Part shown: positions 2,875 to 39,665 of the stretch, in pieces
Numbering within the stretch: position 1 is the first letter of the stretch
How the letters are laid out: each line of letters starts with the position of its first letter
Assembly (NCBI RefSeq): GCF_002113885.1
Contig: NW_018479988.1
Coordinates: 129,176 to 193,175, forward strand
DNA from: Mizuhopecten yessoensis
Taxonomy: Eukaryota
DNA length: 64,000 nt
Direction of reading: 5' to 3'
Position numbers and translations under genes: made by a program
Notes under the pieces: model-generated
Databases searched by the model: none
Told to the model about the DNA's origin: nothing
Seen by the model: the letters and a program-made list of their open reading frames with translations, nothing else

Positions 2875-3018
2875 AATATTACACCACTACGGAAGTACTG
2901 ATGACACGGAAGTGCTTGATGGTCAGACGGCGCCGGACACGTGGTAGCATGCCGGTCAGTATAAATAGCAGGTGGACAACTGAGAGGTCATTCATCCGAC
3001 CTCCTCGGCAGTGTCAAG
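2875..3018 (+). promoter_or_regulatory. Core promoter and non-coding exon 1 of Gly/Tyr-rich gene copy 1
   Basis: TATAAATA at 2960-2967; Inr-like TCATTC with A at 2990, 30 nt after the TATA T; exon ends AAG|GTAAGT at 3018/3019. The same layout precedes all five copies. Confidence 0.85.
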
Positions 3019-3545
3019 GTAAGTCAATATATATCCAATCTTATATCTAAAACATTTTTATTTTGATTCTTGATTCGAACTTATAACATTCTAAAACATT
3101 TAAGGACGTTTTTATTCATTTTTGTTAACAGATGTTACTTTAAAACGTGACCTAAATAGAAATATTTGTTATGTTAGAAAGACATCTGTACCATATTCAG
3201 TAGTCAAACTTTTATCAGTGGTATGCTAACAAAATATTTACTTTATATTAAATTTGTGAGCTAATCATTTAGATCCAAGACTCCATAAAACAAATTGTTG
3301 TAGGTAGTAAAATAAACTTATTTCAACTGTTCTTTAAATGAACATGATAAAATCATAAATATAACTAATAACTTAAACGTCGTCTTACTTACCAGCTATA
3401 TTGGACAGACATTTTGTCTATAAATAAAAAGCAATTACCATTCATGTTATACCAATAATGAACAGAAGTAAAAGAAATATTTTGTGAAGAGTAAATATAA
3501 CTCCATTGTTTGCAGAATCCTCGCTCGCCCCGCCCACCAATCACC

Positions 3546-4948
3546 ATGAACAAGTCTCTGATGCTAGTGTTGATCCCCTGTCTGGTGGCTTACGTCATGG
3601 CCCAGTATTACCAGCCTGGATACGGTGGTATGGCTGGATACGGTGGTGGGTACGGGCCTGGAACCTACTACAACTACGCTGCGCAGAGCGCCCAAGGAGC
3701 AAAGACAAGCAACTTGTTGAACTATGGTAAGGATTTTATGGCATCTGTTTTAATTTCAAACTATTCTACCAACACAGGTTTTCTCAATCAAAATTTACAC
3801 ATCCGGTGAAATTTAACTGGTACTTAACTTTAAACTTAAAATGATAACTTAATATAGAAAAATCATTTTTAATGCGGAACGTAATATTTCTATGCAGAAT
3901 GTTAAAAAGTAAAAGGAAACCCTGAAGTACATAAACGAAACATTATAACTAATCTTCGCATTCCAGTTGAGAATTGATTGATTTTCAAATAATGTAATTG
4001 TCACAATCTAATTAAAACTATATCTTCACATCGCTCCCGTTTACTGATATGTCGCGTTGAAGATCTAACAACATCCCGTAGAGGGTCATGTTCAGGCGAC
4101 CTTTGCATTAACCAATCAGATGAGAGCTTACGCATTTCTGTAAGTGATGATGTAATGATTTCGGAACACACTTGCTATGATAAAAGACCGAGAGGTGTCA
4201 AATGAGCATCGAAAATGGCGGCGCCCATGACACCACGCCGTGTCTATCTACACGACAACGTTTGTACAATTTGTGGATTTTGCTTTGAAATAAGAGAGAC
4301 TTCCTTTTCTGGTGATGTTGTCGTTAAAATGTTTAACAACCTGAAACTTAAATTAACCAATGACAGGCTTCGCAATATTCAAACTATCACTGGACCAGAC
4401 GAAAAAGTGGATTTTGGGCTACGAGGTGTCTGCATTAAATGCTACAGTCCTGCTTTCTGATTGGTTGAAAGAAAGAGTTATGTCGCGTTTTGATTGGCTT
4501 GTTATAAATACGATAATGCATTCATGTTGACCTCTGACGTGACCCTTTATGGAATGTTGTTAGATCTTCAACGCGATAATCAGTAAACGGGAGCGATGAG
4601 AAGATATAATTTTAATTAGATTGTAATTGTCACTAATGAAAATTAATGCAAAAATTGGCGTTTTGGACAAACATACAGGGATACATTATAAATGCTGAAA
4701 CAATCACAAATATATCCTAGAATGTAAATAAGGGATGTTGTAAGCATAATCTTTAACAAAAAGTTCTCAAAAGCATTACATTATATCATGATATCACCTA
4801 ATCCACATAAGAGGTGACAGAAAAAGCTTTAACTTCTCTTCATATATCACTGTTACTTCACGTTAAAAAACAAATGTCTTCTGCTCCAGGCCTTCTCTTC
4901 TTCGCCATCCTCATCCTGACAAATGCCACTGGAAGTATCACTGGTTAA
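3546..4948 (+). CDS. Small secreted Gly/Tyr-rich protein, copy 1 (79 aa; join 3546..3726,4890..4948)
   Basis: Exon 2 starts 3516 after tgcAG; ATG 3546 in ACCATG context; 60 codons + G|GTAAG; acceptor ctccAG at 4889; exon 3 adds GLLFFAILILTNATGSITG-TAA. Exon 3 ends 4994 (G|GTAAGT), 3'-UTR exon 4 starts 5415, AATAAA 5472-5477. Confidence 0.93.
4004..4623 (+). mobile_element. Mutator-like (MULE) non-autonomous element in intron 2 of copy 1
   Basis: About 90-bp terminal inverted repeats (CAATCTAATTAAAACTATATCTTC... / ...GAAGATATAATTTTAATTAGATTG); exact 9-bp TSD TAATTGTCA at 3995-4003 and 4624-4632; absent from intron 2 of copies 2 and 3; internal truncated ORF 4215-4460 with CxxC...CxxC. Confidence 0.9.
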
Positions 4949-7764
4949 ACGTAGTTAACAGAAGCTTACATGCACCTTCACAAGAAATCAAATGGTAAGT
5001 CTCTTGAACACCTGATATGGCTGGTGTTTTTTTCTAAACGCTTGGTATAGCTGATGTTTATGCACATATGTGGCTCATCCTGACAAACCCAAAACAAGAG
5101 TTTGTCTGTAAGGTGGAAAATGCCTTTGCTTCCTAAAATACATTATGTATAATAAATATAAAGATAGATTCAAATTTGTTGTTTAAGATGATGGATACAG
5201 GATAAAGGAGATTATAATTGTAAATGGTGACAATATTCTAAGGTATAATGCATCAACTCTCATCAGATAGTTACGTTTATTCATGCTAGAAACATTTCAA
5301 AATAAAACACGCAATGGAATAAGACGAAACACGTTTTTTATGAATCATGTTTATATAAATAGACCGTGAACATGTGATTCACTTGTACTAAAAAAAAAAT
5401 CTTTATACTTTCAGAATTCCACAGACGTCCTGTTATTGCTGATATTGCGCGATGTATTTTGTGTTGCTATGAATAAAACTGTATTTACATAAAACTACTT
5501 TCGTTTTATTTGTAACTTTTTTATAGAAGTTATTTCTGCGTCAGATACTCTATTTCATTACAGCATTGGAAGTAGCATAGGTGCTTAGTTTGTACAAACT
5601 TAAAGTGAAATAGGTAAAAGTTTAAACGACAGCAAAATCACACCGGGACTAAAATCAGGACAGCTTGGAACTAATAAATAAAAAGGGGAATGGATAAAAA
5701 TAACAAAACAAAAGCAAACCTATCGTACATCATAAACTCTAACAAGAGAGCAGAGGTGAAAACCTGGGCCCGTTTTGGCGAAACTACCACCATATTTTGA
5801 TGATTACTTATTCAAATTTCACATAATTGTAATTAAATGAAAAGTACTATGGACAGATTTAAACTAAACAAAATACCAAGACTGTTTTTGTTGAATGGTT
5901 TTAGCGAATTACAAGACACGTGGTTAGAGATCAGATAAGAACCTATTGAAAAAATGACTTCGTTGAATACAAACGAATGTATATGTTTATCATAATGTAT
6001 TTGCAAGCAAATGGTTTGAACAAGTAAATGACTTAAAATACTAAATATGAAAAGAAAACCTTTGTTGAAAATAATGAACCTCGGTATTTCAAATACAAGA
6101 TTAACCTTAATCATACACATGAGACTGCAACCTAACGATTTGGTTATAGATACAGCATGCCAGAAATAAATATCTGCACCATACAGATAGTCAAAATTTC
6201 TGTTGAAACAGAAGGAAATGTACATATAATCCCTTTATTATGCGAATTTCAAACATCAGGGCAGTACTTATTACATACAGCTGTTTCGTCCTTCTAGGAC
6301 TCAACCAAACTACTATATTTCTCTCATAACAAAGAATGTCAATTAAAATTACACCGCTGAAACAAAATCCTCTCTCATAACACGGAATGTCAATTACTAT
6401 TACACCACTGACACAAAATCACTAGAAAACGAAGTAAACAAATACCAAATAAGAAAACAATAATTATGGCTATTTTGTAAATTAAGGATTCATCAGTGAA
6501 ATAGACAATGAGATGAAAACTCTAAACTGTGAACAATTATATATAAAAAAAAAAACAATTAAAGTCATCAACATACATTGTCTGTTGCATAAGATGACTT
6601 AGATTCAGTTATATTTTTCATTACATTTTACTTCAATATGATAACGATGTCCATAGCTACAAAACCAGACACCCTGAACACTCATGCATAACAGCTATTC
6701 TTTGTGAAAAAACACATCCGTGAATACAGTTCTTTCGTCTGCTATGAAAATGGAATTAATGTTAGAAATAATTCTTTAATATCACATATAAAAGCTTTTG
6801 TTAAATCAACCAGAAAATCATGTCTGCCGTTACATTACTTTCTAGGATAGCGATAGGATCTAAGTCATCATGTGACTGCTAGATCCATGCAGTTCTCAAC
6901 ATGAAGGAAAACACCGTACCATCCCCGCACTTCTCCTTTCGTGTTCTGGAAAGCTCCGCACAAAAGCAAATATATAGTTTTTAGACAGCTTCATAATTCA
7001 GTATATTCCATTAAGATAACACTGAAAGATCGTCCTTGCTTTCAAAGATCATACACTAACAAGATATCCCAGAGGGTTCTTGGCGCCCACCATTGTACCA
7101 TCTTCATTAGTTCTTTGTCAGTTCGATCTTTTCTCTTCTTTCCTCTAATCTGTTTGATCGAGTCATGTTAACAGTAAATGCACCTTGAGGTAACTTTTGA
7201 TCTAAACTTAATACTGATGTGTATGAAAGCCAACCTTCAAAGTGAGTTTGTCATTTCACATATTTACTAGTACAGTACTTTATGTGAAAGAAATAGAATC
7301 GATCATTGCATTATGAGAAAGATCTGTTTAGTTCTGCCTTTAGCCATTTTGTTTTTATGATCAGTCTCAAAATATTTGAATAGCCTATGAGCTAAAAAGT
7401 AATAAAAACTAAAAGTTTGATACTTAATGAATAGCCGTTACAACTTATAAGATTTACATAATTGTGTTTGTATCCGTTTTACTAGATTACTCTAAAATTT
7501 GTTTGGATTTATGTGCTTGTTCGTGAAGTTACAGCCACTGTAGCTGTACATTTTATGACGAACTGCCAACGAGTAAGATTTATTGGTTCTTACGACTGTT
7601 ACCTACGATAGCTTGATGTTCCAGGAACGAGGTGGGAATGTGCATTGATTGAAAAGAAAGATGTGTACCGCACTTTTGAAATAATTTATCGACAGGTTTT
7701 ACAGTGGTAGTATTTAACACAGTGTGGTTAATTTCTTGTTGCAGTTATAAATTCATAAACAAAT

Positions 7765-7928
7765 CTTATTTTGCCAAAGTTTTGGAAAAGATTTGAAGAG
7801 ACTTGAACCTGAACACTGTTTACATTTGGCATTTTGATCGTTTGGCATGATTTAAGTGAGTAACAAGAATGTTGGTTTGAGCACAGAATCCATGCTAGAG
7901 CATGTGAACGGTTTCATGAATACGGGCC
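7765..7928 (+). mobile_element. Truncated right end of a GGGCC-terminated MITE (Harbinger-like), same family as 63348-63606
   Basis: Aligns with 63443-63605 (…ggtttgagcacagaat.catgct..agcatgtgaac.gtt.catgaatacgggcc). Confidence 0.65.
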
Positions 7929-8458
7929 AAGAGGAGAAAACTTTGGCCCGTTTTAGGGAAAGTGTCTCTATGTACTGACTCAGAGTCTGTTCTCCAGTAC
8001 AATTTCGTGTTTCCATGATATTCTTTCAAATTTCATGTAATTTAAATGATTCGAAAATTACTTTGGAAAGATTTTATTCCAAAGTCTCGTTTCATTCCTT
8101 GTCTAGACTTTTTTTAGAGATCAGAATGTAGGCTTTATAACAGATGCCTTCGTTAAATACAGACGGATTTATTCCAAAAAGACTGTCCTTCATGTTTATT
8201 CCGTCAAAGTCAGAAAAGTACGTGGGTAACTGATGATCTGAGTTTATTATAATGTATTAACAAATAGCATGAACGAGTAAAAGAACAATAATAAGAAAAA
8301 ACAAATATGTAAAAAAAAAAAAAAATGGAATTTCTTCGTTTAAAATAGTGACCTCTTGTACCTCGGTATATCACTTGGAAATTGAACTTTAGACATACAC
8401 ATGGGATAGCAACTTTAAGATTTCGTTTTAGATACACCTTGCTAAATATGACTTGTAC

Positions 8459-8848
8459 TGTGCCATACAGCTTTTGCGTTGTTCTAGGACTGATCGGTGA
8501 TGCTAGTGACCGAAAAAATGGTAACCTAAATTAATCTTAATAACCGTTGAAACAGAAGGAGGGGTGCATAAAACCCCTTAATGATGTGAATTTCAAACAA
8601 TAGAGCAGTACTGATCAATTTAATATAAATAAGAGTGTGCCACTTCTCAAAGGGAGATAACTGTGGTCATCACGGATACGGCAAACCTCGAGGACTAAAA
8701 CATCCACCAACAGATTATATCATCTTTTATCTTGAAAAATAGACCACAGACACATACATGGGACTGCACCTTTCACCTGTTGTAATAGATACACCATGCC
8801 AACAATGAATTACACTGCACCATACAGATGTTTTCCTTCTAGGACTCA
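8459..8848 (-). ncRNA. Two degenerate type-I hammerhead ribozyme motifs about 357 bp apart (retrozyme relic)
   Basis: Minus-strand consensus from the copies at 6274, 8459, 8816, 16349, 22157 and 22508: TGCATCA-CYGATGA-GTCC-TAGAA-GGAC-GAAA-CAGCTG-TA-TGATGCA. Every individual copy is mutated or truncated. Confidence 0.6.
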
Positions 8849-11724
8849 ATAAAACTATTATAATCCTCTATCATACCAAAAAATGTCAAGCACAACTAAA
8901 CCGCTGAAATAACCCCCTCTTTCATCACACCGATGATCAATTATTCTAAAAAAAATCATCACTAGAAAACGAAGTAAACAAATGCCCAAATAAGAATGTC
9001 GACGCCAGAAGCCTATTGAATTAAGCATTTATTACATAATATGGGCATTGTGTCAGTTTAAGATTATTCAGTCGAATTGACAAAATAATAATAAAACTTA
9101 AAATAGTTAACAAACAAATGTAAGCAAAGGCAAACTTGGGGAGGTACCATTAAAGACCTACTCAATGTTATCAATTGCTATCAATTCAGTTATATTTTTT
9201 ATTATGTTTTATCTCAAAATAATAATGGTGTTCAAAGTAACAAACCCAGACATACCAATCCCTCATGTGTAACATCTATTCTTTGTGAAACAAAAACATA
9301 CGTTAATGCAATTCACACATCTACTATAGGATAAAAGTCATTGCCTGAGACTGCGAAAGCCTTACAGTTCTCTAAATAAACATATATTGAAGAAAATTAC
9401 CCAACCGTCCAAGAACTGCTCCAGTGGTGTAGTATTATTTTCTACAATAAAGCAAAACTGAAACACTTAGACAGCTTCATAATTCAGTATAATCTATTAG
9501 GATAACACTGAAAGATAGTCCTTGCTTTCAAAGATTACATACTAAAAAGTACTAAAAACTTAAAGATTCATACTTAATGAATAGCTATAACAACTTATAA
9601 GATTTACATAATTGTGTTTGTATACGTTTGTCAAGATTTTTAAGTGGTTTGAATATATGTGCTTGTTCGTGAAGTTACCGCTATTGTAGTTGTACATTTT
9701 ATGACGAACAATCGAATATGATTGATTGATTCTTACGACTGTTACCTACGAAGAGCTTGATGTTCAAGGAACGAGGCGGGAATGTGCATTGATTGAAAAG
9801 AAGGGTTGCTTATTTTTGTACCGCACTGTTATAATAAGTTGTCGACAGGTTTTACAGTGGTAGTATATAACACTGTGTGGTAGTTATTTGGAAATAGCAA
9901 ATATAATTTGTATGTTTGGATAATTGACCATGGTCATTAACAAAACTTAGAATTATTTAATATTGTTTGTAACATGTTTTTGCATCGATTTGTGTTTACA
10001 GTATGACAAGTGCTAGACCAACAAATTAAAAACATATTTTGACATATGACACGAAATGTTGTTTTTGTTTTACAAATAAGTTGTCATCTGTCATACTTGA
10101 ATATTCCTCTGCAACCACGCCTTTTGATATTGATAATTCGAGCATTATGATTATACTCGACTTAAGAACAGATAGCATGGAAATATTCCCGACGACTAGC
10201 AAGGATCTATTAATGGATTATTTGAGTGAGTGGATGAAATGAGCATGTTGAAACCTCCTCCTCAACTAGATCGGCGAATTATAGCACGCGCAAATGGTTA
10301 TTAAAATTACTTTATTTGTTGTAAATGAAAATGACACACATTTTGCAAAAAAAAAAAAAAAATCTTTCCAATTTTTTAATGAAATCATAAGGAATGGGCT
10401 AAATGATGAATCGGTGTACTTCGGTGTTCGGTTTATAACCCGATCAGAAATCTGATTTTATATTCTATAATGCTGCTCATCAATTATCAATATGAAAATA
10501 AAAATGGAGATTAACATATTATGGTTATATGCATAATAGAATCTTATCCATCCTGGATTCCCTGGCTTCCAATGCATACACTCATTCAGTTTTGTTATAT
10601 TTATTCTATTTACTTCATATATGTAGTAGGTGGTGGAAACGATCAACTAGTAATGAAACCAGTAATAATGATAAAGACAACAAAATTACATAGTTGCCAT
10701 GGCACTTGTTTTGTTTCCTTTTTCCACTGCACGTACTATAAAAGTGTATTATAAGATAAGATATATATAAATATAAAACCTTGTTCGGACTGAATTGTTC
10801 ATGAATTAAATCGGTTTCAGAATAAAGTCTAGTTGCAAAGTTACGATTGACCGATAGTCCTTTGGCCAGCAGGAAGTCGATTTGAATGGATAAATACATC
10901 AATATTTGCTACACAATATGGTCATTTCGTTCATTTAGTGGAATCAAAACCCATAGGTATTCCGAAACATATTAAGAAACACGGCAAATGGGCGAAATTT
11001 ATAATTAAACCCCTAAAGTAATCATCTTTTATGACTATGACGTTAACGTATTAACGACCTCAGAAATCCGGCCTTGACATTCATAGCTGATACGAATATC
11101 ATCGATTTGGTCGAGTAATGTAGTGAATAAGTCATTCAATGCATGGTTAAGATATTGACTGTAAATACTAAATGAGTGTAGTTCAATGTTTAGGGAGTTC
11201 CTGTAGTCATACATTTTAACCGAGTAAATTTTGGACGTCTTAAACAGGGGATGGCGTTTTCATTGAAGTATGTGTTGTAAGTATGTTATGTGTAATGGTT
11301 ATGAAAGTGCAGGACAGTACTCAAAATTTTAAAGAATAAATTGACTTGAAGATAGTTAGTTTTGCTGTCTTTGTAAGAAAGATATATCTACAAAAATAGC
11401 TGTCTAGTGTTTGTTTTAATGCCATCAACATAAACCGGTCTATAACAGTATCGCTCCTTTTCTCAATATCTCTCTTTTTAAGGTTCATAACTTTGCTCTT
11501 AGGTAACATTATGTCCTCTGCACAGTTGTACAGAATATATTCCTTTACAAAATGAAATATATCTATTACACAATTTATGGTCAGAGATGATGAAAAATTA
11601 ACAAAAATATATCATGTCTTCCTGGCAATGTTCATATACAATATTACAACACTGCAGAAGGACTGATGACACGGAAGTGCTGAATGGTCAGACGGCGACG
11701 GACACGTGATATAATCCCGGTCGG

Positions 11725-11783
11725 TATAAATAGCAGGTGGTCAAATGAGAGGTCATTCATTCGACCTCCTCTGCAGTGTCAAG
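11725..11783 (+). promoter_or_regulatory. TATA/Inr and non-coding exon 1 of copy 2
   Basis: TATAAATA 11725-11732, TCATTC (A at 11755), AAG|GTAAGT at 11783. Confidence 0.85.
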
Positions 11784-12231
11784 GTAAGTCAATCTATAAA
11801 CGTTTTATTATGGGATTTTTTGTTTGAATTTATAACCTCTAAAACATGTTTAGTTGTAAGATCGTTTTGCTCAAGTTCGTAAACCAATGTAACTTTAAAA
11901 CTTGACCTTATTGCGCTACAAGCATAGAACTATTGGAATGTTCAAAATATATATATACCAACTTCAATAGTCAAACTTTTACCAGTGGTTCGCTTACAAA
12001 ATGTTTACTTCATATCCAATATGTGAACACATATTTGAGCTCGCCATTTGAAAACATTTTGATACATACTTGAAACAAATGACGAGATCAAAGACTATCA
12101 AAGATATTTTTGTAGAAAGAAAATAATACTTTTTTATACTGTCCTTTAAAGAGATAAAACAAATATATTGTGAAGAGTAAATATAACTCCATTGTTTATA
12201 GAATCCTCGCTCGCCCCGCCCACCAATCACC

Positions 12232-12940
12232 ATGAACAAGTCTCTGATGCTCGTTTTGATCCCCTGTCTGGTGGCTTACGTCATGGCCCAGTATTACCAG
12301 CCTGGATACGGTGGTATGGCTGGATACGGTGGTGGGTACGGGCCTGGAACCTACTACAACTACGCCGCGCAGAGCGCCCAAGGAGCCAAGACAAGCAATC
12401 TCCTGAACTATGGTAAGGATTTTATGGCATCTGTTTTGATTTCAAATATTCTACCATTCTACCGGTTTTTATAAAACGAAACATAAATATCTAGAGTAAT
12501 TTAAGGCGTATTTAACTATAAACTTTACAATCCATACACAAAAGTTAAACAGAAAAAGGATTTACCGATTTATTTATACGAAAAATTATAACTCCACCAT
12601 GCTTTCCGGTAAAAATTTACCGGTAATGATGTAAATGTTATTCATTAAAATGAATGCAAAAAATAGCCTTTTGTTAAAACTGTCACAATACGCACGGATA
12701 CATTATAAAGGCTAATTTTGCCTTAAAATGAAATGAGGGATGATTTAAACATGATCTTTTATAAAAAGTTATAAATGGCATCACATTACATAATGATATC
12801 AGCTTGACCAAAAAAGAGGTTTAAATTTACATTTACATAACACGATTACATTACTTTAAACACGAACGTCTTTTGCTCCAGGTCTTCTCTTCTTCGCCAT
12901 CCTCATCCTGACCAATGCCACTGGTAGTATCACTGGTTAA
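12232..12940 (+). CDS. Small secreted Gly/Tyr-rich protein, copy 2 (79 aa; join 12232..12412,12882..12940)
   Basis: Protein identical to copy 1; GT-AG introns; exon 3 ends 12987 (G|GTTAGT); exon 4 from 13402; AATAAA 13459-13464. Confidence 0.93.
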
Positions 12941-13876
12941 ACGTAGTTAACAGAAGCTGACATGCACCTTACACAAGAGATCAAATGGTTAGTCTTTTGA
13001 ACACTTGATATTGCTCTTGTTTGTTTATCCATTTATCATATGTGGCCCAACCTGACAAACCCAAACGAGAGTTTCTTTGTTTTTAAGCTGTAACATGTCT
13101 TTGGTTCCTTAAATACAGATTAGAAAATAAATATCAAAAAGATAGATTCTAATTTGTTGTATAACCTGCTGGATACAGGATAAAGGGGATTATAATTGTA
13201 AGTGGTGACACTATTCCAACGTATATTGGATCAACTTACATCAGATAGTCACGTTTAGTCACGCTTGAAACATTACGAAATAAGGCATGTAAGACGAAAC
13301 ACTAAAGAGAATACCCCGATTTTATTTTTTCCTATTTTGAATATAATTTGTCTTTATTTTGATAAATATATGTATTTATTTTATTTTTTCTATACTTTCA
13401 GAATTCCACAGACGACCTGTTATAGCTTATATTGCGCGATATATGTTGTGTTGCTATGAATAAAACTACCTTTATATAAAACTTGTTTACGATTTATTTG
13501 TCACTTCTGTTCTCATAGAAGTTATAATTGCGTCAGATACACTTTTTCACTACATTTCTGAAATAATAATTATTATTTATACAACCTTAAAGTAAAACAG
13601 GCAGAAGTATATACGCAAGCAACAACACACAGGGACCCAACACAAGGGAGGAATGGATTAAAATAACAAATCAAAAGAAAATCTATTGTACATCATAAAT
13701 TCCAACGAAGAATCAGAGGAGAAAACTTTGTTCTCTTTGTTCTGACTCAGAATCTATTTTCCAGCACAATATAGTAGTTCTATGATAATTCATTCCAATT
13801 TCATTTAATTTAAATGATTCGAAACCTTCTGTGGAAATATTTAAATCCAAAGTCTTGCTTCATTCCTTGTCAAGAC

Positions 13877-15057: not shown

Positions 15058-15064
15058 CAGTAAT

Positions 15065-15563
15065 TCTCCTGAATAACTGATATTGCTTTGGTGTATTCTG
15101 AACGCTTGCTATATCTGTTGTTTATCCATTTACCATGTGTGACCCAACTTGACAAACCCAAACAAGAGTTTCTTTGTTTGTAAGGTGTAACATGTCTTTG
15201 TTTCCTAAAATACAGATTGGAAAATAAATATCCAAAAGATATATTCTAATTTGTTGTATAACCTGCTGGATACAGGATAAAGGGGATTATAATTGTAAGT
15301 GGCGACACTATTCCAACGTATATTGGATCAACTTACATCAGATAGTCACGTTTATTCACGCTTGAAACACTACGAAATAAAATGCAATGGGATAAGACGA
15401 AACACTAGAGAGAATATCCCGACTTTATTTGTTTTAATTTTGAATATGATTTGTCTTTATTTTGATAAATGTACTTATTTGATTTTTTCTATACTTTCAG
15501 AATTCCACAGACGACCTGTTATAGCTTATTTTGCGCGATATATTTTGTGTTGCTATGAATAAA
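15065..15563 (+). pseudogene. Orphan intron 3 plus terminal exon 4 of the Gly/Tyr-rich gene (no exons 1-3)
   Basis: Paralogous to about 12995-13464; intact acceptor tttcAG|AATTCCACAG at 15500/15501; AATAAA 15558-15563; starts right after the LINE tail. Confidence 0.8.
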
Positions 15564-18500
15564 ACTGCCTTTATATAAAAAAAAAATACGATTTATTTGT
15601 CACATTTTCACTACTCTCTGAAAGTAGCATAATTATTATGTATATAGTTTGTAAAACCTTAAAGTGAAACAGGCAGAAGTATATACGCCAGCAACAACAC
15701 ACGGGGACCCAATCAGAACAACTTGGAACTCATACTAAAAAGGGGGGGAACGAATTAAAATAACAAATCAAAAGAAAATCTATTGTACATCATAAACTCC
15801 AACAAAAGACAAGAGGAGAAAACTTGGGCCCGTATTAGATAAAGTGCCTCTATGTTCAGACTCAGAGTCTGTTCTCCAGCACAATTTCGTGTTTCTATGA
15901 CAATTCATTCAAATTTCCTTTTATTTAAATGATTCGAAAATTACTTTGGAAAGATTTTAATCCAAAGTCTCGTTTCATTCCTTGTCAAGACTTATTTTAC
16001 TTCAAGATCAGAATGTAGGCTTTATAACAGATCCCTTCGTTGAATACAGACGGGTGTATTCCGAAAAGAGTGACCTTCATATTTATTCCGTCAAAGTCAG
16101 CAATGTATGCAGGTAACTGACGTTCTGAGTTCATCAAAATGTATTAACAAATAGCATGAACGAGTAAAAGAACAATAATAAGAAAAATCAAATGCGTAAA
16201 AAAATAAAACAAAAAATGAAAATACCTTCGTTTAAAATATTCTTCTTGTACCTCTGTATATCAGATACAAGATGAACCTTCATAATACACATGGGACTGC
16301 AACTTAAAGAATTGGTTATAGATAAAGCATGCCAAAAATGAATTACACTGTATCATACAGCTGTTGCGTTCTTCTAGGACTGATCGGTGATGCTAGTGAC
16401 CGAAAAAAATGGTAACCTAAATTAATCTTAATAACCGTTGAAACAGAAGGAGGGGTGCATAAAATCCCTTAATTATGTGAATGTCAAACAATAGAGCAGT
16501 TCTGATCAATCTAATATAAATAAGAGTGTGCCACTTCTTAAAGGGAGATAACTGTGGTCATCACGGATACGGCAAACCTCGAGGACTAAGACATCCACCA
16601 ACAGATTCTATCATCTTTTATCTTGAAAAATAGACCACAGACACAAAAAAGTATCACTAGAAAACGAAGTAAACAAATGCCCAAATAAGAATGTCGACGC
16701 CAGAAGCCGATTGAATTAAGCATTTATTACACAATTTGGGCATTGTGTCAGTTTAAGATTATTCAGTCGAATGGACAAAAAAATATGATAAAACTTAAAA
16801 TAGTTAACAAACAAATGTAAGCATAAGGCAAACTTGGGGAGGTGTCTTTAAAGATCTAATCAATGTTATCAATAGCTATCAATTAAGTTATATTTTTTAT
16901 TATGTTTTATCTCAAAATGATAATGGTGTTCAAAGTAACAAACCCAGACATACCGATCCCTTATGTGTTACATCTATTCTTTGTGAAACAAAAACATACG
17001 TGAATGCAATTCACACATCTACTATAGGATAAAAGTCATTGCCTGAGACTGCGAAAGCCTTACAGTTCTCTAAATGAACATATATTGAAGAAAATTACCG
17101 CACCGTCCAAGAACTGCTCCAGTGGTGTAGTATTATTTTCTACAATAAAGCAAAACTAAAACACTTAGACAACTTCATAATTCAGTATAATCTATTAAGA
17201 TAACACTGAAACATCGTCCCTTGCTTTCAAAGATTAAATACTAAAAAGTTCTAAAATCTTAAAGATTCATACTTAATGAATAGCCATAACAACTTATAAG
17301 ATTTATATAATTGTTTGTATACGTTTGGCAATATTTTAAAGTGGTTTGAATATATGTGCTTGTTCGTGAGGTTACCGCTACTGTAGTTGTACATTTTATG
17401 ACGAACTGCCATCGGATATGATTGATTGATTCTTACGACTGTTACCTACGATAGCTGGATGTTCCAGTAACAAGGCGGCTATGTGCATTGATTGAGAAGA
17501 AGGGTTGCTTATTTGTATACCGCACTGTTATAATAAGTTGTCGACAGGTTTTACAGTGGTAGTACATAACACTGTGTGGTAGTAATTTGGAAATAGCAAA
17601 TATAATTTGTATGTTTGGATAATTGAAATTGACCATCGCCATTTACAAAATGGCGCAAACTGAGAATTATTTAATATTGTTTGTAACATGTTTTTGCATT
17701 GATTTGTGTTTACAGTATGTTAAGTGCTTAACTAATAAATTAAAAACGAATTTTTTCATAAGACACGAAATATTGTTTTTGTTTTCCAAATAAGTAGTCA
17801 TCTGTCATACTTGAATATTCGTCTGCAACCACGCCTTTTGATATTGATAATTCGAGCATTATACACGATTTAAGAACAGATAGCATGGAAATATTCCCGA
17901 CGACTAGCAAGGATCTATTAATGAATTATTTGAGAGAGTGGATGAAATGAGCATGTTGAAACCTCCTCCTCAGCTAGATCGGCGAATTATAGCACGCGCA
18001 CATGGTTATTAAAATTACTTCATTTATTGTAAATGAAAATGACACTCATTTTGTAAAACTATTTTTTTTCTTTCTAATATTTTAATGAAATCATAAGGAA
18101 TGGAGTGGATGATGAATCGGTGTACTTCGGTGTTCGGTTTATAACCCGATAAGAAATCTGATTTTATATTCTATAATGCTGCTCATCAATTATCAATATG
18201 AAAATAAAAATGGAGATTAACATATTATGGTTATATGCATAATAGAATCTTATCCATCCTGGATTCCCTGGCTTCCACTGCATACACTCATTCAGTTTGG
18301 TTATATTTATTCTATTTACTTCATGTATGTAGTAGGTGGTGGAAACGATCAACTAGTATTGAAACTAGTAATAATGATAAAGACAACAAAATTGCATAGT
18401 TGCCATGGCACTTGTTTTGTTTCCTTTTTCCACTGCACGTACTATAAAAGTGTATTATAAGATAATATATATATATATATCTAAAACATTGTTAGGACTG

Positions 18501-19495: not shown

Positions 19496-19554
19496 TATAA
19501 ATAGCAGGTGGTCAACTGAGAGGTCATTCATTCGACCTCCTCTGCAGTGTCAAG
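19496..19554 (+). promoter_or_regulatory. TATA/Inr and non-coding exon 1 of copy 3
   Basis: TATAAATA 19496-19503, TCATTC (A at 19526), AAG|GTAAGT at 19554. Confidence 0.85.
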
Positions 19555-20004
19555 GTAAGTCAATCTATAAATGTTTTATTATGGGTTTTTTGTTTGAATT
19601 TATAACATCTAAAACATGTTTAGCTGTAAGACCGTTTTACTCAAGTTCGGAAACCAATGTAACTGTAAAACTTGACCTTATTGCGCTACAAGCATAGAAA
19701 TATTGGAATGTTCCATATATATATCTATACCAACTTCAATTGTCAAACTTTTACCAGTGGTTCGCTTACAAAATGTTTACTTCATATCCAATATGTGAAC
19801 ACATATTTGAGCTTGCCATTTGAAAACATTTTGATACATACTTAAAACAAATGACGAGATCAAAGACTATCAAAGATATTTTTGTAGAAAGTAAAATATA
19901 CTTTTTTTATACTTTCCTTTAAAGAGATAAAACAAATATATTGTGAAGAGTAAATATAACTCCATTGTTTATAGAATCCTCGCTTGCCCCGCCCACCAAT
20001 CACC

Positions 20005-20757
20005 ATGAACAAGTCTCTGATGCTCGTGTTGATCCCCTGCCTGGTGGCTTATGTCATGGCCCAGTATTACCAGCCTGGATACGGTGGTATGGCTGGATAC
20101 GGTGGTGGATATGGGCCTGGAACTTACTACAACTACGCCGCGCAGAGCGCCCAAGGAGCCAAGACTAGCAACTTGTTGAACTATGGTAAGTATTCCATGG
20201 CATCTGTTTAAATTTCAAACTATTCTACCAACACAGGTTTTACTTAACCAAAATATACATATCCGGTGAACTTTATAGTGGGTTTGATCAATAAACTGTA
20301 AATAATGACCTAATCCAAAACAATAAGTTCAATCCGGAATGTAATATATGTATGCAGTAAGTTAAACCGAAAAAGTATAACTAACCCAAGTATCCCGGAA
20401 AAGAGTTTTTTTCTAAATACTGTATTTGTCATTTGTGTAAATGAATGCAACAATCTGCGTTTCTGTCAATCTGTAACGATACACATGAATACATTATTAA
20501 TGTTTAAAATAACTACAATAATGCCCTAGAATGTAAATAAGGGAGGATTTAAACATGATCTTTAAAAAAACGTTCTCAATACCATTACATTATACCATGA
20601 TATCAACTTAACCACAAAAGGGGTAAAAAAAAATGGTTTAAATTTATATTTATATATCAGGATTACATTACCGTAAAAACGAATGTCTTTTGCTCCAGGT
20701 CTTCTCTTCTTCGCCATCCTCATCCTGACCAATGCCACTGGAAGTATCACTGGTTAA
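20005..20757 (+). CDS. Small secreted Gly/Tyr-rich protein, copy 3 (79 aa; join 20005..20185,20699..20757)
   Basis: Protein identical to copy 1; exon 3 ends 20804; exon 4 from 21268; AATAAA 21325-21330. Confidence 0.93.
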
Positions 20758-22500
20758 ACGTAGTTAACAGAAGCTGACATGCATCTTACACAAGAAATCA
20801 AATGGTAAGTCTTCTGAACACTTGATATTGCTCTTGTTTATTCTGAACGCTTGCTATAGTTGTTGTTTATCCATTTATCTAGTGCAGAAACTTGTTTCAT
20901 CCTGACATGCCTAAAAAGGGACTATCTTTGTAAGGTGGAACATTTTTTATTTTTTTAAAATATATATTAAGTATAAAGAAATATCCAAAAGATTCTGATA
21001 TGTTGTTAAACCTGTTGGATACAAGAAACAGGAGATTATTATTGTAAGTGGTGACGCTATTCTAACGTATCACGGATCAACTCATATCAGATAGTCGTGT
21101 TTATTCATGCTGGAAACACTACAAGATAAAACATGTAATGGAATAAGACAAATCACAAGGAAAAACATTTTATTTTCTTCAAGAATCATATCTATTTAAA
21201 TAGACCGTGAACTTGTGATTCTCTATTAAATAATTAAATGTTCTAATTCTATTTTTTATGCTTTCAGAATTCCACAGACGTCCTGTTATAGCTGATATTG
21301 CGCGATATATTTTGTGTTGCTATGAATAAAACTGTATTTACATAAAACTATTTTCGTTTTATTTGTCTTTTTTTTTTACTAGAAGTTATTTCTGTGTCAG
21401 ATACACTATTTCATAACAGCATTGACAGTAGCATGTATATAAAGTTTGTACAAATTTAATGTGAAATAGGCAAATGTAATTATGCCAGCAACAACACAGG
21501 AGAACCAAATCACAACAACTTGGATCTAATACTAAAAAAACGTTGAAGAACGGATAAATATAATTAAAGAAAATATATTGTACATCATAAACTCTAACAA
21601 GAGACCACAGGAGAAAACCCGGGCCTATATCAGGGAAACTGTCACTATGTTCAGACTCTGAGTCTGTTCTCCAGCACAATTTCTTTTTTCGTTGATAACT
21701 TATTCCAATTTTAATGAATTGAAAATGACTATGGATACATTTGAATCCAAACACTCGCTTCATTTATTGTCAAAATCTTCTTTGTGGTATGGTTTCAGCA
21801 AATTAAAGAAATTTAGGGACAGATCAGAATATAAGCTTTTGAAAAAAATGGCTTTGTTGAGTACAGGCGGATATATTATAAAAAGAGTGTCTTATGTGTT
21901 TCTCTCCTCCAAGTCAGGAAAGTCCGTAGGTTACTAACGTTCTGATTTATCATAATGTATAAACAAATGGCATGAACGAGTAACTTTTTTTACAAAATAT
22001 GTAAAAATAAAAACGAAAAATAAAAAAACCTTCGTTGAAACTAATGTTATCTTGTACGTCGGTATATTAGATACAAGATCAAACTCAGTCACACACATGG
22101 GACTGCAACTTCAAAATTTGGTAATAGTCTGATTCAGCACGCCAAAATGAACACTTTGCTGAACAGATGTGTCCCCTTCTAGGACTCATCGGTGATGCAA
22201 GGGACCTCAAAAAACTAAACTGGTCTAAAGTACTGTTGAAACAGAAGTAGAGGTGTATAAAACCTTGTCATTATATGATTTTCAAAAATTAGGGAGAAGT
22301 ACTATTTAATTTCGAATTATTAAGAATGTACCACTCCTCAAGGGGAAATAACTGTGGGCATCAAGGTTTACGGCATTCCTCGGGGACCAAGAAATCCACC
22401 AACAGAGTCTACCACTTTGTATATTGAAAGATGAACATAAAACACACAGATGGGACTGCACGTTTAAAATGTAGTAACAGATACAGCATGCCCAAAATGA

Positions 22501-28990: not shown

Positions 28991-29627
28991 TGACGAGCTT
29001 AGGTTCGGTTTAAATAATTTTATAGTATTAACTCTACACTTTATTCCTGTCCTCAAAGATAACAACGATATTATACATTACTGACTTGAAAATAGGCAGT
29101 GTGGCCATGTTGTGCTTAATTAGGTGGTATAATACCCTTCCAATAGTTTAATTATTTTATTATTTGAGCCAATTCACGCTTACCTTAAGATTATTTTATT
29201 TTATTTATTTTATCTTTCTTGTATGAAATATTATTTATGATTGCTTTATACTGGAAAAAAATGAATAAAAACCCTTTACTCTATATTCTACAATTTTCAT
29301 TTATTGTATATGTGTTACAAATCACCTAACCTTTACCATTTCTCTGCACCTGATCTTCCTTTTAACTGTATTACATATGAAAAAACATGCATCCCCTTTA
29401 AGAGGGTAATGTTATAACATAAATGTCTACGGATATACCCGAATGACATAGTTTCACATCATATTTTTACATTTCAATACAAAACTCAATCATACTACCC
29501 GAAGATTTCTGTGAAAGGTCAGACTTCTATACGTAATGTTACGACATTTCGGCAGCACAGCGAAAGGCGGAAGCACTGATGGTCAGACATGTGACGGCCA
29601 CGAACACAAAGTGACCAGTCCTGTAAG

Positions 29628-29686
29628 TATAAATAGCCCAGCTAGAAATCAACTCACCATTCACTTGTTTGCCCTAGCAGTGTAAG
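29628..29686 (+). promoter_or_regulatory. TATA/Inr and non-coding exon 1 of copy 4
   Basis: TATAAATA 29628-29635, CCATTC (A at 29659), GCAGTGTAAG|GTAAGT at 29686. Confidence 0.8.
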
Positions 29687-30053
29687 GTAAGTAAGATTTC
29701 ACTGCTCTACTTTCTATCTGTTTTTCTTCTGAAGCATCTTCATAATTTCGTCATCATGCACTATACAAACTTCACTAAGCATTTAACTATTTTGTATGAA
29801 TACTAGCACCTAACTATATTGTTATATCCTTAGAAGAAAAATACATCATTTTTACTCAAATGTAAAGTTTCAAACTTGCTCTAGTCTTGTGCCAGTCAGG
29901 GTTGCTTATCAAAAGCGTCGCGTTATTATTTATTTATTGTAGGACATGAGACCACAGCCAACAAGAACTCTTACCTCAATAGTGCTTAATTTCATAACCT
30001 AAACTATTCTAATAATATTTGTGGTTGTTACCAGAATCCGCCCACCAATCACC

Positions 30054-30694
30054 ATGAACAAGTCTCTGATGCTCGTGTTGATCCCCTGCCTGGTGGCTTA
30101 CGTTATGGCCCAGTATTACCAGCCTGGATACGGTGGTATGGCTGGATACGGTGGTGGGTACGGGGCTGGAACCTACTACAACTACGCCGCGCAGAGCGCC
30201 CAAGGAGCCAAGACAAGCAACTTGTTGAACTATGGTAAGGATTTGTATGTTCTTATATGTGCGCTCATTTTTACTGAATATGTATTTATTACCATTTTAT
30301 AATATTCAAAAATACAGCCGAAAAGTTGAAAAATTAAAAATTATGACTACATAAAAAAAAAAAAAAAAAACATGAGCTCCGCAAAAAAAAATTGTATTTA
30401 GAATAAACAGTTCTAGAAAAAACAATATATTTCAATAATGATGTTGTCGCTTAAAAAATGAATGCGAAAATAAAAGTAATATTCGTTCTGCTAACTGTTA
30501 CATATGCTGTATTTAAAACATCAAAAATAAGATATGAATTACGTTATTACCTTCATTTGACTTCCCCTATTTACTTTTGCCTCTATGCCTGAATTTGAGA
30601 AAGTGCGAGACTGATAACTAATGTTTTTGTTCCAGGCCTTCTCTTCTTCGCCATCCTCATCCTGACCAACGCTACCGGAAGTATCACTGGTTAG
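30054..30694 (+). CDS. Small secreted Gly/Tyr-rich protein, copy 4 (79 aa, P38A variant; join 30054..30234,30636..30694)
   Basis: Same exon structure; TAG stop; exon 3 ends 30746 (G|GTGAGT); exon 4 from 31175; AATAAA 31231-31236. Confidence 0.93.
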
Positions 30695-32699
30695 ACGTAG
30701 CCTCCCGATACTGACATGCTCCCCTCCCCGTACAAGTGATCAAATGGTGAGTCTTTTGAATGTTTGATTGATACAGCTTCTATTCATATATTAGAAAAAT
30801 GTGAAAATTTCATTTCATTATAATGTAACACTTCCTGGAAAATATTTTCCATTTTTCCTTTTTTCCATTTTTTAAACAACATAAAAGAAGCAGGCAGATA
30901 AATTGTTCTATTTGTTTTAAGCTACATTAATTTGATTATTAGTAAAGTTCACTGCATTATACATTTGAAAAGTATTCCGTTTTAGGTACCCTCTCAAACG
31001 TGTAATGGACTGACTACAGCCATCAAATTCTGGACAATATCAAGCTTTGATAAAGTTTAACAAAAAAACAACAAAATACAAATAAAAAACGATTTTTGCT
31101 ACTGTTTCTTTAGGCGTATGTTATGAATCAATTTAAAACGTGTTCTAATCACATCTTTTTTCTTGTTCTTTCAGAATTCCACAGACTTCCTGATACTGTC
31201 ATATTGCGTGAATCATAATATGTTGCTGAGAATAAAACTTAATTTATTATGTAAATATTTGAATTTTTATCTTTGCCTTCGCACAATGAAATCATTGGAA
31301 AGTTGTTTAGTGTAATGAATGCTACATCAATTTTACTTAAACATATGAAACTGTCTTCAGTTTAATTCAAACTGCAACTAAAATTGCTGAAAATGTAGAT
31401 AATTAAACAAATAAACGATACTGCTATATAAAAATTAGGCAATGTATATAAAAGGAATTTCTTACGCGAGTATATAAGCAAAGAAGTATCTTTATTTTTT
31501 AGTACAGTCATATATGCACATGGTGCAAGGTTAAGTAAAACAGAAAGGTTTACACCACTGAGTCAACACACCACAAGGACCTAAACAGGCGGTTGATGTT
31601 TGACTATCTGAACAGGCATGTTATAGATAAACATTGTGTATAAATAGCAGGATTATATACTATTTTTGTATAGTAAAATTCACACTCATTAAAGCGGTTT
31701 TTTTAGCGTATGGTGGAATGTTAACCGTTTAGTGCATTGATATATTGGCTTACCGTTTGTATATATAAAAACTTCAATTTGAACCACCATAATTGAGCGT
31801 AATATAAAAAACGCGAAAAGTGTTAATTTATAAGTTTATTAGAATACGTGCACCAGTAAAATAGGTACGCTTACAGCATAGCATATATTTGTAATGAAGG
31901 CAGAAAAATCTCGATCAAGGGTTAGAGTGCTTGTGCTTATCACAAATCTTCTCCCGGAGGTTGAGATTTGTCTGCCTTCATTACACAGGAATTAATGATT
32001 ACTTTCCCATACTTTCTTATGGTAAACCCAATACAACGCACTATCATCAATATGATGCTAAAGAGGAATGGCAATACTGTTGACGCGATCAGTGTGAAGT
32101 GGTGAGCTTTCTTCCCTGAAAAAGATACACGTTTCCCCACCTCAGCGTATACAAGATGAAAGTGACTCATGAGATACATATCCTAAAACGGACATTGTAT
32201 TCGCCGGAACAATACCTGACACCAACACACAGTTTAAATCTTGCACAACATCAAGGAAAAAAGGAGGGGGCGTGGGGGCGGGGGCAGCGATGGTTACCCT
32301 GTTGATGTCTCCTCAACTGGCTGGTTATTTCTAATGTCGATTAAGTTACTGTTTTCTATAAACGTCTAATGTATTGTCATCAGTATTTACTTTAATAATT
32401 CTACAGGACGTCTTATCTTGTGAACTGATAGATGTATTTACCGCGAGCATTTCCTTTACAGAAAACTTGCAGTTGGGAAGTATATAAGAAATTTATATTT
32501 TGTGAACATCATATGAAATAAAAATGTAAAATGTTAGGTGCTGAATATTATGTAAGGTTTCTAGTATACGTAAATTGTTAATTTACTGTCGGTTTAAGGA
32601 CTAATTTATATAATGTGCCAACTTAATAAGTGGGGTTTAAGTAAGGGACCGCAGAATTTATTAACTTTGCTCCAAACGAAACTACTAATGAATAATTTA

Positions 32700-37167: not shown

Positions 37168-37537
37168 TCTTATATTTGTATTCAATAATTGTAAATATAT
37201 GTGCAAAAATTTATATTTGTATTCAATAATTGTAAATACATGTGCAATAATTTATATTTGTATTCAATAATTGTAAATATTTGTGCAATATTTCATATTT
37301 GTATTCAGTAATTGTAAATATATGTGCAATAATTTATATTTGTTTTCAATAATTGTAAATGTATGTGCAATAATTTATATTTGTATTCAGTAATTGTAAA
37401 TAAATGTGCAATAATTTATATTTGTATTCAATAATTGTAAATATATGTGCAATATTTCATATTTGTATTTAATAATTGTAAATATATGTGCAATATTTTA
37501 TATTTGTATTCAATAATTGTAAATAAATGTTCAATAA
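37168..37537. repeat. 41-bp AT-rich minisatellite, about 9 copies
   Basis: Unit AATAATTTATATTTGTATTCAATAATTGTAAATATATGTGC. Confidence 0.92.
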
Positions 37538-37808
37538 AACAAATATGTATCAGCATTCTCAAGATGAAGACATAACATGAATAATGTTGTATATCAAATA
37601 TTTCAAATGTTTATAACGTGTTAAGTACCGACAAGCAGGATGACCCTTCAAAGAGCCGCCGACGTGTCGTGTCTAGTAGACGGCGCCGTCTTCCTGGTAC
37701 TGGTCACTGCAATGTTACGACACTTCGAGATCGGCTGAGCCGGACAAAAAGGAAGTGTTACCTGGTTAGTCGTAATAGCTCTGGACACGCAATGACCACC
37801 CTGGTCAA

Positions 37809-37868
37809 TATAAATAACCATCAGTTTCTCCGGAAGATCATTCTGGCTGTCTACCTCTGCAGTGTAAG
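37809..37868 (+). promoter_or_regulatory. TATA/Inr and non-coding exon 1 of copy 5
   Basis: TATAAATA 37809-37816, TCATTC (A at 37840), GCAGTGTAAG|GTAAGC at 37868. Confidence 0.8.
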
Positions 37869-38598
37869 GTAAGCATCGTGGTTACTGACTTATAGTGGTT
37901 TCAGAATTTTTTATTGTTGACATCCAACATTTTTTGAAATCGCTGCCTTCTTTATACGTTTCATATTTTACTTACATATATGTATTTAGTTTTCAACTCC
38001 CCTTGTTAATGTGCACATGAATTTTTCATAACTAAAATTCACTTAATTTTTCGTACGAATCACCTAACACAGCAATTGCATTTAAAAAATCAAAGACATC
38101 GTTGAAAAGGGAGTAGAATCTTTTCATTAAAGATGGTCATTTTATAAATGAAGGAATTCTTTTGGCTATATCAACTTGTACTGTGTCCCCGGTTTCCTAT
38201 ATGGTCCTCGCTAGTACCGGTAACTAATATACTAGGTGGAAGATTTATCGCTATCCTTGATTGACTTTGGTCAAACGCAATTATATTGAAAATGCATCGA
38301 TTGTTTATATACGTATTGGATGGTCAAGCTTTGAATTCAGGTCACATTAAGTTTTTATGTAAGTCCGGGATATTTAGGTAATTTACACCAATGAAATACA
38401 AAACATCGACGTTTTTGATTAAAAATATAGTCTAAAGCTAAATGAATTTCAATTGTATTCAGACATGCACAAGATAAGAGGCGATTCAGGTAAATTATTT
38501 ACCTTATGTCTACCTTGACATACACGTTTCTCCTCGTCCTTTTTTATTTATCGATATTTTCCTTGTAGAATCATCGCCCGCCCCGCCCACCTCTCACC

Positions 38599-39060
38599 AT
38601 GAACAAGTCTCTGATGCTCGTGTTGATCCCCTGCCTGGTGGCTTACGTCATGGCCCAGTATTACCAGCCTGGATACGGTGGTATGGCTGGATACGGTGGT
38701 GGGTACGGGCCTGGAACCTACTACAACTACGCCGCGCAGAGCGCCCAAGGAGCCAAGACAAGCAACTTGTTGAACTATGGTAAGCAAAAACACAACAGGA
38801 CAAGTTTGGCGTTGTATCCATTAGTTTTAACATTTCGTTTTCTTTGTATATTGCACATTTTACGCGTATTAGGATTTGATGGCCTATATCCATAACTGTT
38901 ATTACCTCATTAATCGTACACTACAGACCGGGCATTGTTATTGACGAGGTTGAATAGTCTGTTCTCACAAAACACGCTCAATATAAACTTACTTGTTCCA
39001 GGTCTTCTCTTCTTCGCCATCCTCATCCTGACCAATGCCACTGGTAGTATCACTGGTTAG
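38599..39060 (+). CDS. Small secreted Gly/Tyr-rich protein, copy 5 (79 aa; join 38599..38779,39002..39060)
   Basis: Protein identical to copy 1; TAG stop; exon 3 ends 39101; exon 4 from 39374; AATAAA 39454-39459. Confidence 0.93.
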
Positions 39061-39665
39061 AGTTGGATACAAAGAGCAAGCTAGTACACGCATATCAAAT
39101 GGTAAGTTTGTGATTTTGTAAAAGGGTCAATATTAATTATTTATTTTAATTTAATCAAAGATGGATCATAATTATATAGTTATTTAGCTAAAGCACGAAA
39201 CTCAATTACCTTACAATCAGGTAAAAATCAAACTAAAAAAAAAAAATCGAAGAAAAAATCAGTCATTAAAAACCGAAAACTAAATAACTTTAACTTTGTA
39301 CCATATTTTGAATCAGATTTAATTTTCAAATAATTTCTACATTATTCTCATATCTGTTCTCTTTATCTTTCAGATTTCCACAGTCGGCCTAACATAACTA
39401 TTATATTGCGCGATCGTCACCAGATATTGTTGCTTCTCTTCTGTTATTGTTTTAATAAAAAATATTTATTGGATACTGTGGTTATTCTTCTATCTGAAAA
39501 TGAACGCTCCGGTAACCAACTTTTCTTGAATACGAAAGTGTGTTTAAGCAACATGCTTTGTAATTCGTAACATGAAGTGTAACTCCCTTTCTTAAAAGGT
39601 CTCATGTATCGTTTTATAATAACATTTTCAGATAAATAAATGTATTTTGAAGATGTTATCAAAAT

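What the first reader, a model, noticed from the sequence alone, without database searches (positions are those of the whole stretch)
2960..39459. Five-gene tandem array of an unrecognised 79-aa secreted Gly/Tyr-rich protein with a hydrophobic tail
Seen: five same-strand four-exon genes, all intact from TATA to AATAAA, encode the same protein apart from one P38A change. The predicted 60-aa mature chain has 13 Gly, 9 Tyr, no Cys and only one charged residue. It is tripartite: a YG/GY-repeat head, a polar AAQSAQGAKTSN linker, and a hydrophobic LLNYGLLFFAILIL block followed by TNATGSITG, which contains an N-A-T sequon. The hydrophobic block is encoded largely on its own exon. Established: Gly/Tyr-rich small secreted proteins are typical of molluscan shell-matrix, periostracum and byssus materials (e.g. 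shematrin, KRMP, prismalin classes), where Tyr can be oxidised to DOPA and cross-linked. N-terminal Gln after signal cleavage can cyclise to pyroglutamate. Inference: a dosage-amplified, highly expressed amphiphilic structural or self-assembling (or defence) peptide family. I cannot assign it to a named family.
Basis: partly seen in the sequence, partly recalled or inferred. Interest (0 to 1): 0.85.

Follow-up and report, generated by a model that had tools for sequence, protein, structure and literature searches.

The report
Scallop six-copy secreted glycine-tyrosine protein
The Yesso scallop keeps at least six neighbouring copies of a small, undescribed exported protein nearly identical and makes it in bulk in one RNA sample; it is probably a building material of shell, ligament or attachment tissue, has a relative in a distant clam, and its job is untested.

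Summary
Five intact four-exon genes encode one 79-aa protein (P38A in copy 4); a sixth identical copy lies about 4.4 kb upstream of the window. The genome is Mizuhopecten yessoensis (LOC110441983, uncharacterised; no paper found). One RNA run carries 1.2% of its reads on these exons and confirms all three introns; another has none. Copies 4 and 5 have unalignable introns but near-identical codons, pointing to exon-limited gene conversion plus strong purifying selection (dN/dS about 0.01). The only outside relative found is in a gill metagenome of the file clam Acesta (another order), with the same exon layout; signal peptide, linker and hydrophobic start are conserved while the Gly/Tyr head drifts. 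It fails tests for Mfp-3, KRMP and abductin. Best reading: a bulk-secreted structural protein with a cross-linkable Tyr/Gly head and hydrophobic tail (0.45). Main rival: the tail is a GPI signal, leaving a roughly 27-residue surface peptide (0.25). Tissue and function are untested, and my most sensitive homology search was wasted on a wrong frame. The scan had not reported this family on other DNA.

The parts
2960..5494 (+). Copy 1 gene: TATA 2960, predicted +1 about 2990, exon 1 to 3018, exon 2 3516-3726, exon 3 4890-4994, exon 4 from 5415, AATAAA 5472
   Evidence: introns and 3' end near 5494 confirmed by reads
3546..3602 (+). Signal peptide, residues 1-19 (copy 1), V-x-A before Gln20
   Evidence: sequence; 16/19 identical in Acesta; no predictor run
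3603..3665 (+). Gly/Tyr head, residues 20-40, predicted disordered
   Evidence: least conserved part versus Acesta, 11/21
3666..3713 (+). Conserved YYNYAAQ motif and polar linker, residues 41-56; holds candidate GPI omega sites N43 and A46
3714..4948 (+). Uncharged C-terminal segment, residues 57-79, split by the phase-1 intron 2 (3727-4889); predicted helix 56-78; sequon N72; stop 4946-4948
11725..13464 (+). Copy 2 gene: exon 1 to 11783, exon 2 12202-12412 (ATG 12232), exon 3 12882-12987, exon 4 from 13402
   Evidence: its variants seen in reads
15060..15608 (+). Orphan duplicate of intron 3 and exon 4 without coding exons (relic or partial duplication)
19496..21330 (+). Copy 3 gene: exon 1 to 19554, exon 2 19975-20185 (ATG 20005), exon 3 20699-20804, exon 4 from 21268
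29628..31236 (+). Copy 4 gene (P38A): exon 1 to 29686, exon 2 30035-30234 (ATG 30054), exon 3 30636-30746, exon 4 from 31175; introns unalignable to other copies
   Evidence: its 3' UTR in 6,600 reads
37809..39459 (+). Copy 5 gene: exon 1 to 37868, exon 2 38569-38779 (ATG 38599), exon 3 39002-39101, exon 4 from 39374; introns unalignable to other copies
   Evidence: its 3' UTR in 8,894 reads
4003..4624 (.). 622-bp element with 25-bp terminal inverted repeats inserted in intron 2 of copy 1 only (passenger)

Best explanation
A small protein secreted in bulk by one glandular tissue or stage as part of an extracellular organic material (periostracum, shell matrix, ligament or byssus-type). Shown: six intact copies, spliced, about 1.2% of reads in one sample and none in another, amino acids almost frozen, coding exons homogenised. 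Inferred: after signal removal a 60-residue chain starting with Gln (probably pyroglutamate) is released. The uncharged C-terminal segment, too short in strictly apolar residues and lacking flanking basic residues for a firm membrane anchor, makes chains associate with each other or with a membrane or lipid surface. The disordered Gly/Tyr head supplies tyrosines for cohesion and oxidative cross-linking. The array exists for output, with selection and gene conversion keeping the product uniform.
For: 149,096 of 12.4 million reads in X21 (about 28,000 RPKM pooled), none on exons in X24 or X6, a trace in X2. Copies contribute similar shares (copy 1 about 12%, copies 1+2 26%, copies 0+1 27-36%). 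25 synonymous against 1 replacement column; tail 71-79 has 6 synonymous and 0 replacement changes, P=0.0004. AlphaFold: disordered head, one helix 56-78. Gly/Tyr regions of KRMPs are thought to be quinone-tanned (PMC3191542); duplicated, highly expressed low-complexity proteins typify mantle secretomes (PMC4897951).
Against: No tissue label, proteomic hit or paper. The Tyr head is the least conserved part across orders. Known shell and byssus families usually diversify, whereas this one is frozen. The cleaved signal peptide is as constrained as the tail (6 synonymous, 0 replacement), so tail conservation does not prove that it is retained. The C-terminus satisfies GPI rules of thumb.
Confidence: 0.45

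Rival explanations
1. GPI-anchored surface peptide. Residues 46-79 are a GPI signal (omega site, polar spacer, hydrophobic tail) that is replaced by a lipid anchor, leaving a 24-27 residue peptide holding 8 of the 9 Tyr, displayed densely on a cell surface (CD24/CD52-like layout, from memory), perhaps tethering an epithelium to tanned matrix.
For: Rule-of-thumb omega sites N43-Y-A and A46-Q-S/A are acceptable in both scallop and Acesta; A46 is 11 residues before the hydrophobic start; the spacer is small and polar; no charge after K53; low hydrophobic moment, so not amphipathic.
Against: 33 residues after omega and a 9-residue polar end are long for GPI signals (general knowledge). TSNLLN is invariant across two orders and the tail is under strong selection. 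1% of tissue reads is unusually high for a GPI protein. No GPI predictor could be run.
Confidence: 0.25
2. Defence peptide, analogous to the Gly/Tyr-rich NLP-29/caenacin antimicrobial peptides of nematodes, with the hydrophobic tail acting on or trapping microbes.
For: Tandem cluster of six, conserved signal peptide, N-terminal Gln and YGG-type head; such clusters of Gly/Tyr-rich peptides defend C. elegans (PMC2453101). ETS-like GGAAG and a TGACCA element recur in otherwise diverged promoters. On/off expression could be induction.
Against: The nlp-29 cluster diversified under positive selection; this one has dN/dS about 0.01. Net charge +1, no amidation or dibasic site. Zero exon reads in X24 and X6 argue against constitutive haemocyte expression, since haemocytes permeate bivalve tissues.
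Confidence: 0.12
3. Single-pass membrane microprotein: residues 57-79 span a membrane with the Gly/Tyr head outside or in a secretory granule lumen.
For: 23 uncharged residues, predicted helix, 19-residue hydropathy about 1.6.
Against: Only 9 strictly apolar residues, no basic residues after the helix, no cytosolic tail; hydropathy is borderline.
Confidence: 0.06
4. Gamete-coat or larval structural protein (egg envelope, larval shell or settlement secretion), amplified like insect eggshell genes.
For: Strict on/off expression and conversion-homogenised Gly/Tyr-rich arrays recall insect chorion genes (from memory).
Against: No stage or tissue data; no sequence link to any known coat protein.
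Confidence: 0.08

Closest known systems
LOC110441983 / KP79_PYT16916, 16918, 16919 (M. yessoensis database records)
   Same: Identical protein.
   Different: Uncharacterised. RefSeq treats copies as isoforms of one gene, one model running from copy 2 to copy 4; the 102-aa forms use an ATG found only in copy 2, upstream of the predicted start site; copy 1 is also modelled in a wrong frame; UniRef's 'SecG' name has no profile support.
Unnamed Acesta excavata homologue (P0002, L001)
   Same: Same TATA, short non-coding exon 1, phase-1 intron before the hydrophobic exon, signal peptide ending V-x-A then Gln, YYNYAAQ and TSNLLN motifs, exon 3 starting GLL.
   Different: Head has drifted, linker has two Arg; contig ends 20 nt into exon 3; copy number unknown. 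Host origin is inferred from the sample (PMC8755941) and the introns.
KRMP and shematrin (pearl oyster shell matrix)
   Same: Secreted, Gly/Tyr-rich, duplicated, highly expressed.
   Different: No Lys-rich six-Cys basic region (KRMP); no basic C-terminus and far shorter than shematrins (from memory); C-terminus hydrophobic; copies homogenised rather than diversified.
Mussel foot protein 3 (PF04202)
   Same: About 6 kDa, Gly/Tyr/Asn-rich; weak Pfam score (E 0.0045).
   Different: Below cut-off (17.8 vs 22 bits), lost without the signal peptide and absent for Acesta; no Arg/Trp richness; Mfp-3 is highly polymorphic (PMC9999432) and has no hydrophobic tail.
Abductin (scallop hinge ligament)
   Same: Scallop, secreted, 19-residue signal, Gly-rich, one GGM.
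   Different: 22% rather than 58% Gly, one Met in the mature chain, no GGFGGMGGGX repeats (PMC9999432).
NLP-29 / caenacin peptides of C. elegans
   Same: Small secreted Gly/Tyr-rich peptides in a six-gene cluster.
   Different: Those diversify under positive selection; no homology found; this protein has a 23-residue uncharged tail.

Membership tests
Mfp-3 (PF04202) | Pfam score above gathering cut-off over the mature chain | tested here: not met
   17.8 and 15.3 bits vs 22; no hit for mature chain or Acesta
Mfp-3 (PF04202) | Foot/plaque location and DOPA | not testable with these tools
   run tissues are coded
KRMP | Lys-rich basic region with six Cys | tested here: not met
   mature chain has 1 Lys, 0 Cys; definition from PMC3191542
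KRMP | Gly/Tyr-rich region | tested here: met
   13 Gly, 9 Tyr of 60, but N-terminal rather than C-terminal
Shematrin | Basic C-terminal motif ending in Tyr (definition from memory; source paper not held) | tested here: not met
   last 26 residues carry no charge
Shematrin | Presence in prismatic shell matrix, mantle-edge expression | not testable with these tools
   no tissue labels or proteome
Prismalin-14 | PIYR repeats and Asp-rich termini (from memory) | tested here: not met
   no Asp or Arg in the protein
Abductin | GGFGGMGGGX repeats, about 58% Gly, high Met | tested here: not met
Scallop Tyr-rich byssal proteins (Chlamys farreri) | 20.5-28.9 kDa or Mefp1-like repeats; foot expression | tested here: inconclusive
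GPI-anchored proteins | N-terminal signal peptide | tested here: met
   sequence rules and cross-order conservation; no predictor run
GPI-anchored proteins | Omega site, polar spacer, hydrophobic C-terminus without charged tail | tested here: inconclusive
   rule-of-thumb fit at N43 and A46 in both species, but long tail
GPI-anchored proteins | Release by PI-PLC | not testable with these tools
   bench test
NLP-29/caenacin-type antimicrobial peptides | Adaptive diversification of cluster members | tested here: not met
   dN/dS about 0.012 vs PMC2453101
NLP-29/caenacin-type antimicrobial peptides | Induction by infection and antimicrobial activity | not testable with these tools
   no labelled expression data
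SecG (UniRef label) | Match to SecG profiles | tested here: not met
   no Pfam or NCBIfam hit

The most novel reading that the evidence does not exclude
An old, undescribed bivalve family of GPI-anchored micro-peptides: a 27-residue, probably pyroglutamyl, Tyr/Gly chain tethered to the membrane at very high density and cross-linked through its tyrosines, forming a lipid-anchored tanned layer that joins a secretory epithelium to periostracum, shell or byssus.
Probability: 0.15. Interest if true: 0.7.

Novelty: new variant of a known kind. Interest (0 to 1): 0.42.

Why it matters
It is among the most abundant transcripts of some scallop tissue or stage, yet is undescribed and mis-annotated. It is kept across two bivalve orders and can be synthesised, so its role is cheap to test. 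If structural, it adds a head-plus-hydrophobic-tail design to mollusc biomaterials. If GPI-anchored, it would be an unusual membrane-tethered tanning peptide. The array is also a clean case of exon-limited concerted evolution.

Tried and rejected
Error: searches used window:3548-3727, two bases off frame. Correct-frame searches: word-seeded search found only the scallop and Acesta records; metagenome scans blank; Atlas features 0.80 or less, leads only; PDB nothing; Atlas fold search only generic helices; Rfam nothing. Literature: IDs and peptides absent from main texts and from the supplements held for five scallop papers (68, 70, 71, 89, 90; none held for 47, 69); ID formats may differ, so these blanks are weak. 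Rejected: assembly artefact or alleles (introns 68-95% or unalignable; copy-specific UTRs in RNA); neuropeptide precursor (no dibasic sites); amphipathic helix (moment 0.06-0.16 over 57-71); codon preference alone as the cause of synonymous identity (4-fold codons 4/16 identical to Acesta vs 27/32 between copies 4 and 5, P=9e-5). The Logan runs listed mostly match the intronic element, not the gene (shown for X2, X6). The N stretch at 1606-1748 was not filled; L002 was not read, and L003 letters over that stretch were not read.

Full report
Observation. Each has a short non-coding exon 1, a coding exon 2 (residues 1-60 plus one base), a coding exon 3 (61-79, stop, start of 3' UTR) and a non-coding exon 4. 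All introns are GT..AG. A TCATT-type initiator sits 30-31 nt after TATA in all five, even where promoters have diverged. The proteins are identical except P38A in copy 4, and the composition counts are as stated.

Identity. The correct-frame exon 2 matches Mizuhopecten yessoensis LOC110441983 at 100%; L004 from assembly GCA_002113885.2 equals window 10005-30757. The records are uncharacterised and partly wrong: a model spanning copies 2 to 4, an upstream ATG present only in copy 2, a wrong-frame model of copy 1, and a SecG label with no profile support. A sixth gene with the same protein lies about 4.4 kb upstream of the window (L003, ATG 10001). It differs from copy 1 at 7 synonymous sites and about 6-7% of intron and flank and lacks copy 1's insertion, so it is probably a paralog rather than an allele.

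Expression. In raw-read run X21, 149,096 of 12.4 million reads lie on the copy 1 region, nearly all on exons (1.2%, about 28,000 RPKM pooled over copies). All three introns are spliced as predicted. Paralog-specific letters give copy 1 about 12%, copies 1+2 26%, copies 0+1 27-36%; the 3' UTRs of copies 4 and 5 appear in thousands of reads. Run X24 has no exon reads, X6 none, X2 a trace. Expression is therefore very high and tightly restricted, but tissue and stage are hidden from me.

Evolution. Across six copies there are 25 synonymous and 1 replacement variable columns (dN/dS about 0.012); every segment, including signal peptide and tail, is constrained. Copies 1-3 align in their introns at 68-95%, in line with their synonymous divergence of about 0.2. 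Copies 4 and 5 have introns with no BLAST match to any other copy, yet synonymous divergence of only 0.11-0.21, with one silent difference between their exon 2 coding parts. Similarity drops at or near exon and stop boundaries, and 6 of 15 pairs of informative sites are incompatible with one tree. Four-fold codons are randomised against Acesta (4/16) but not between copies 4 and 5 (27/32; P=9e-5). Gene conversion in coding islands plus purifying selection is the best account (inference); codon selection may contribute (GC3 0.63-0.70).

Outside relative. P0002 (56% identity, E 1.8e-13) lies on a 1.8-kb contig of JGI Ga0072491, the gill metagenome of Acesta excavata (PMC8755941), order Limoida against Pectinida. 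It has the same TATA, exon 1 donor, phase-1 intron and an exon 3 beginning GLLCFFF. Identity by region: signal 16/19, head 11/21, residues 41-50 8/10, 51-60 6/10. Signal and linker beat all 5,000 shuffles; the head alone barely does (87/5,000). Both chains start with Gln after V-x-A. So the family is old and is defined by its signal, linker and hydrophobic start more than by the Gly/Tyr repeat. Its wider range is unknown, partly because my index-free search ran in the wrong frame.

Mechanism. AlphaFold on the single sequence gives a disordered head and one helix, residues 56-78 (pTM 0.32, so only secondary structure is usable). The helix is hydrophobic, not amphipathic, has nine strictly apolar residues and no flanking basic residues, so it would be a weak membrane anchor and is probably carried into the ER lumen (inference). 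There it is either kept, giving a secreted head-and-tail chain that self-associates and can be cross-linked through Tyr, or exchanged for a GPI anchor at N43 or A46, both acceptable in both species. Bulk expression, dosage and the constrained tail favour the first (0.45); the spacer-plus-tail layout supports the second (0.25). A defence peptide like the nematode Gly/Tyr-rich NLP-29 cluster (PMC2453101) is possible, but that cluster diversifies and is the opposite of this frozen array (0.12).

Comparison. It resembles the Gly/Tyr-rich, duplicated, highly expressed low-complexity proteins of mollusc mantle and foot (PMC4897951, PMC3191542), but is not a member of the named families tested: Mfp-3 (sub-threshold and signal-dependent), KRMP, shematrin, prismalin-14 or abductin. 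No paper in the library names the gene or its peptides.

Verdict. Real, expressed, undescribed and conserved across two bivalve orders; most likely a new architectural variant of a familiar kind. Interest 0.42. Limits: no tissue, no predictors, no function test, one wasted search. The joined spliced model was left out of all searches, and the masked N stretch was left alone.

Noticed in passing
window 4003-4624: 622-bp non-autonomous element with 25-bp terminal inverted repeats in intron 2 of copy 1, absent from copy 0; related copies are abundant in RNA runs, with depth about 850 in X24.
   Followed up: partly
window 15060-15608: Orphan copy of intron 3 and exon 4, 89.6% identical to copy 2, with no coding exons.
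   Followed up: partly
window 13789-14593: Open stretches on both strands that read like a LINE/reverse-transcriptase fragment; no Pfam hit.
   Followed up: partly
window 6274-22970: Duplicated flank that another reader called a fossil hammerhead retrozyme; Rfam found no hammerhead at E up to 1. A 46-bp, 10-copy tandem repeat at 22500-22967 derives from this flank.
   Followed up: partly
window 2860-2960, 29535-29630, 37700-37810: Short promoter elements (TTACGACA-like, GGAAG, TGGTCA/TGACCA, GACACG) recur in otherwise diverged promoters; candidate tissue-specific sites.
   Followed up: partly
window 49066-50085 (-): 340-codon Ser/Thr-rich open exon of a neighbouring minus-strand gene; no Pfam or NCBIfam match.
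   Followed up: partly
window 25905-28988, 37170-37537, 43885-45037, 47626-48333, 51848-53755, 55808-56112: Large minisatellites (56, 41, 26, 38, 71 and 43 bp units); the 56-bp array separates copies 3 and 4.
   Followed up: no
L003 1-4513: C2H2 zinc-finger gene is the upstream neighbour of copy 0.
   Followed up: no
window 4963-4994 (reads of X21): About 2,800 reads carry an exon 3 UTR variant not present in any of the six assembled copies: an allele or a further copy.
   Followed up: no
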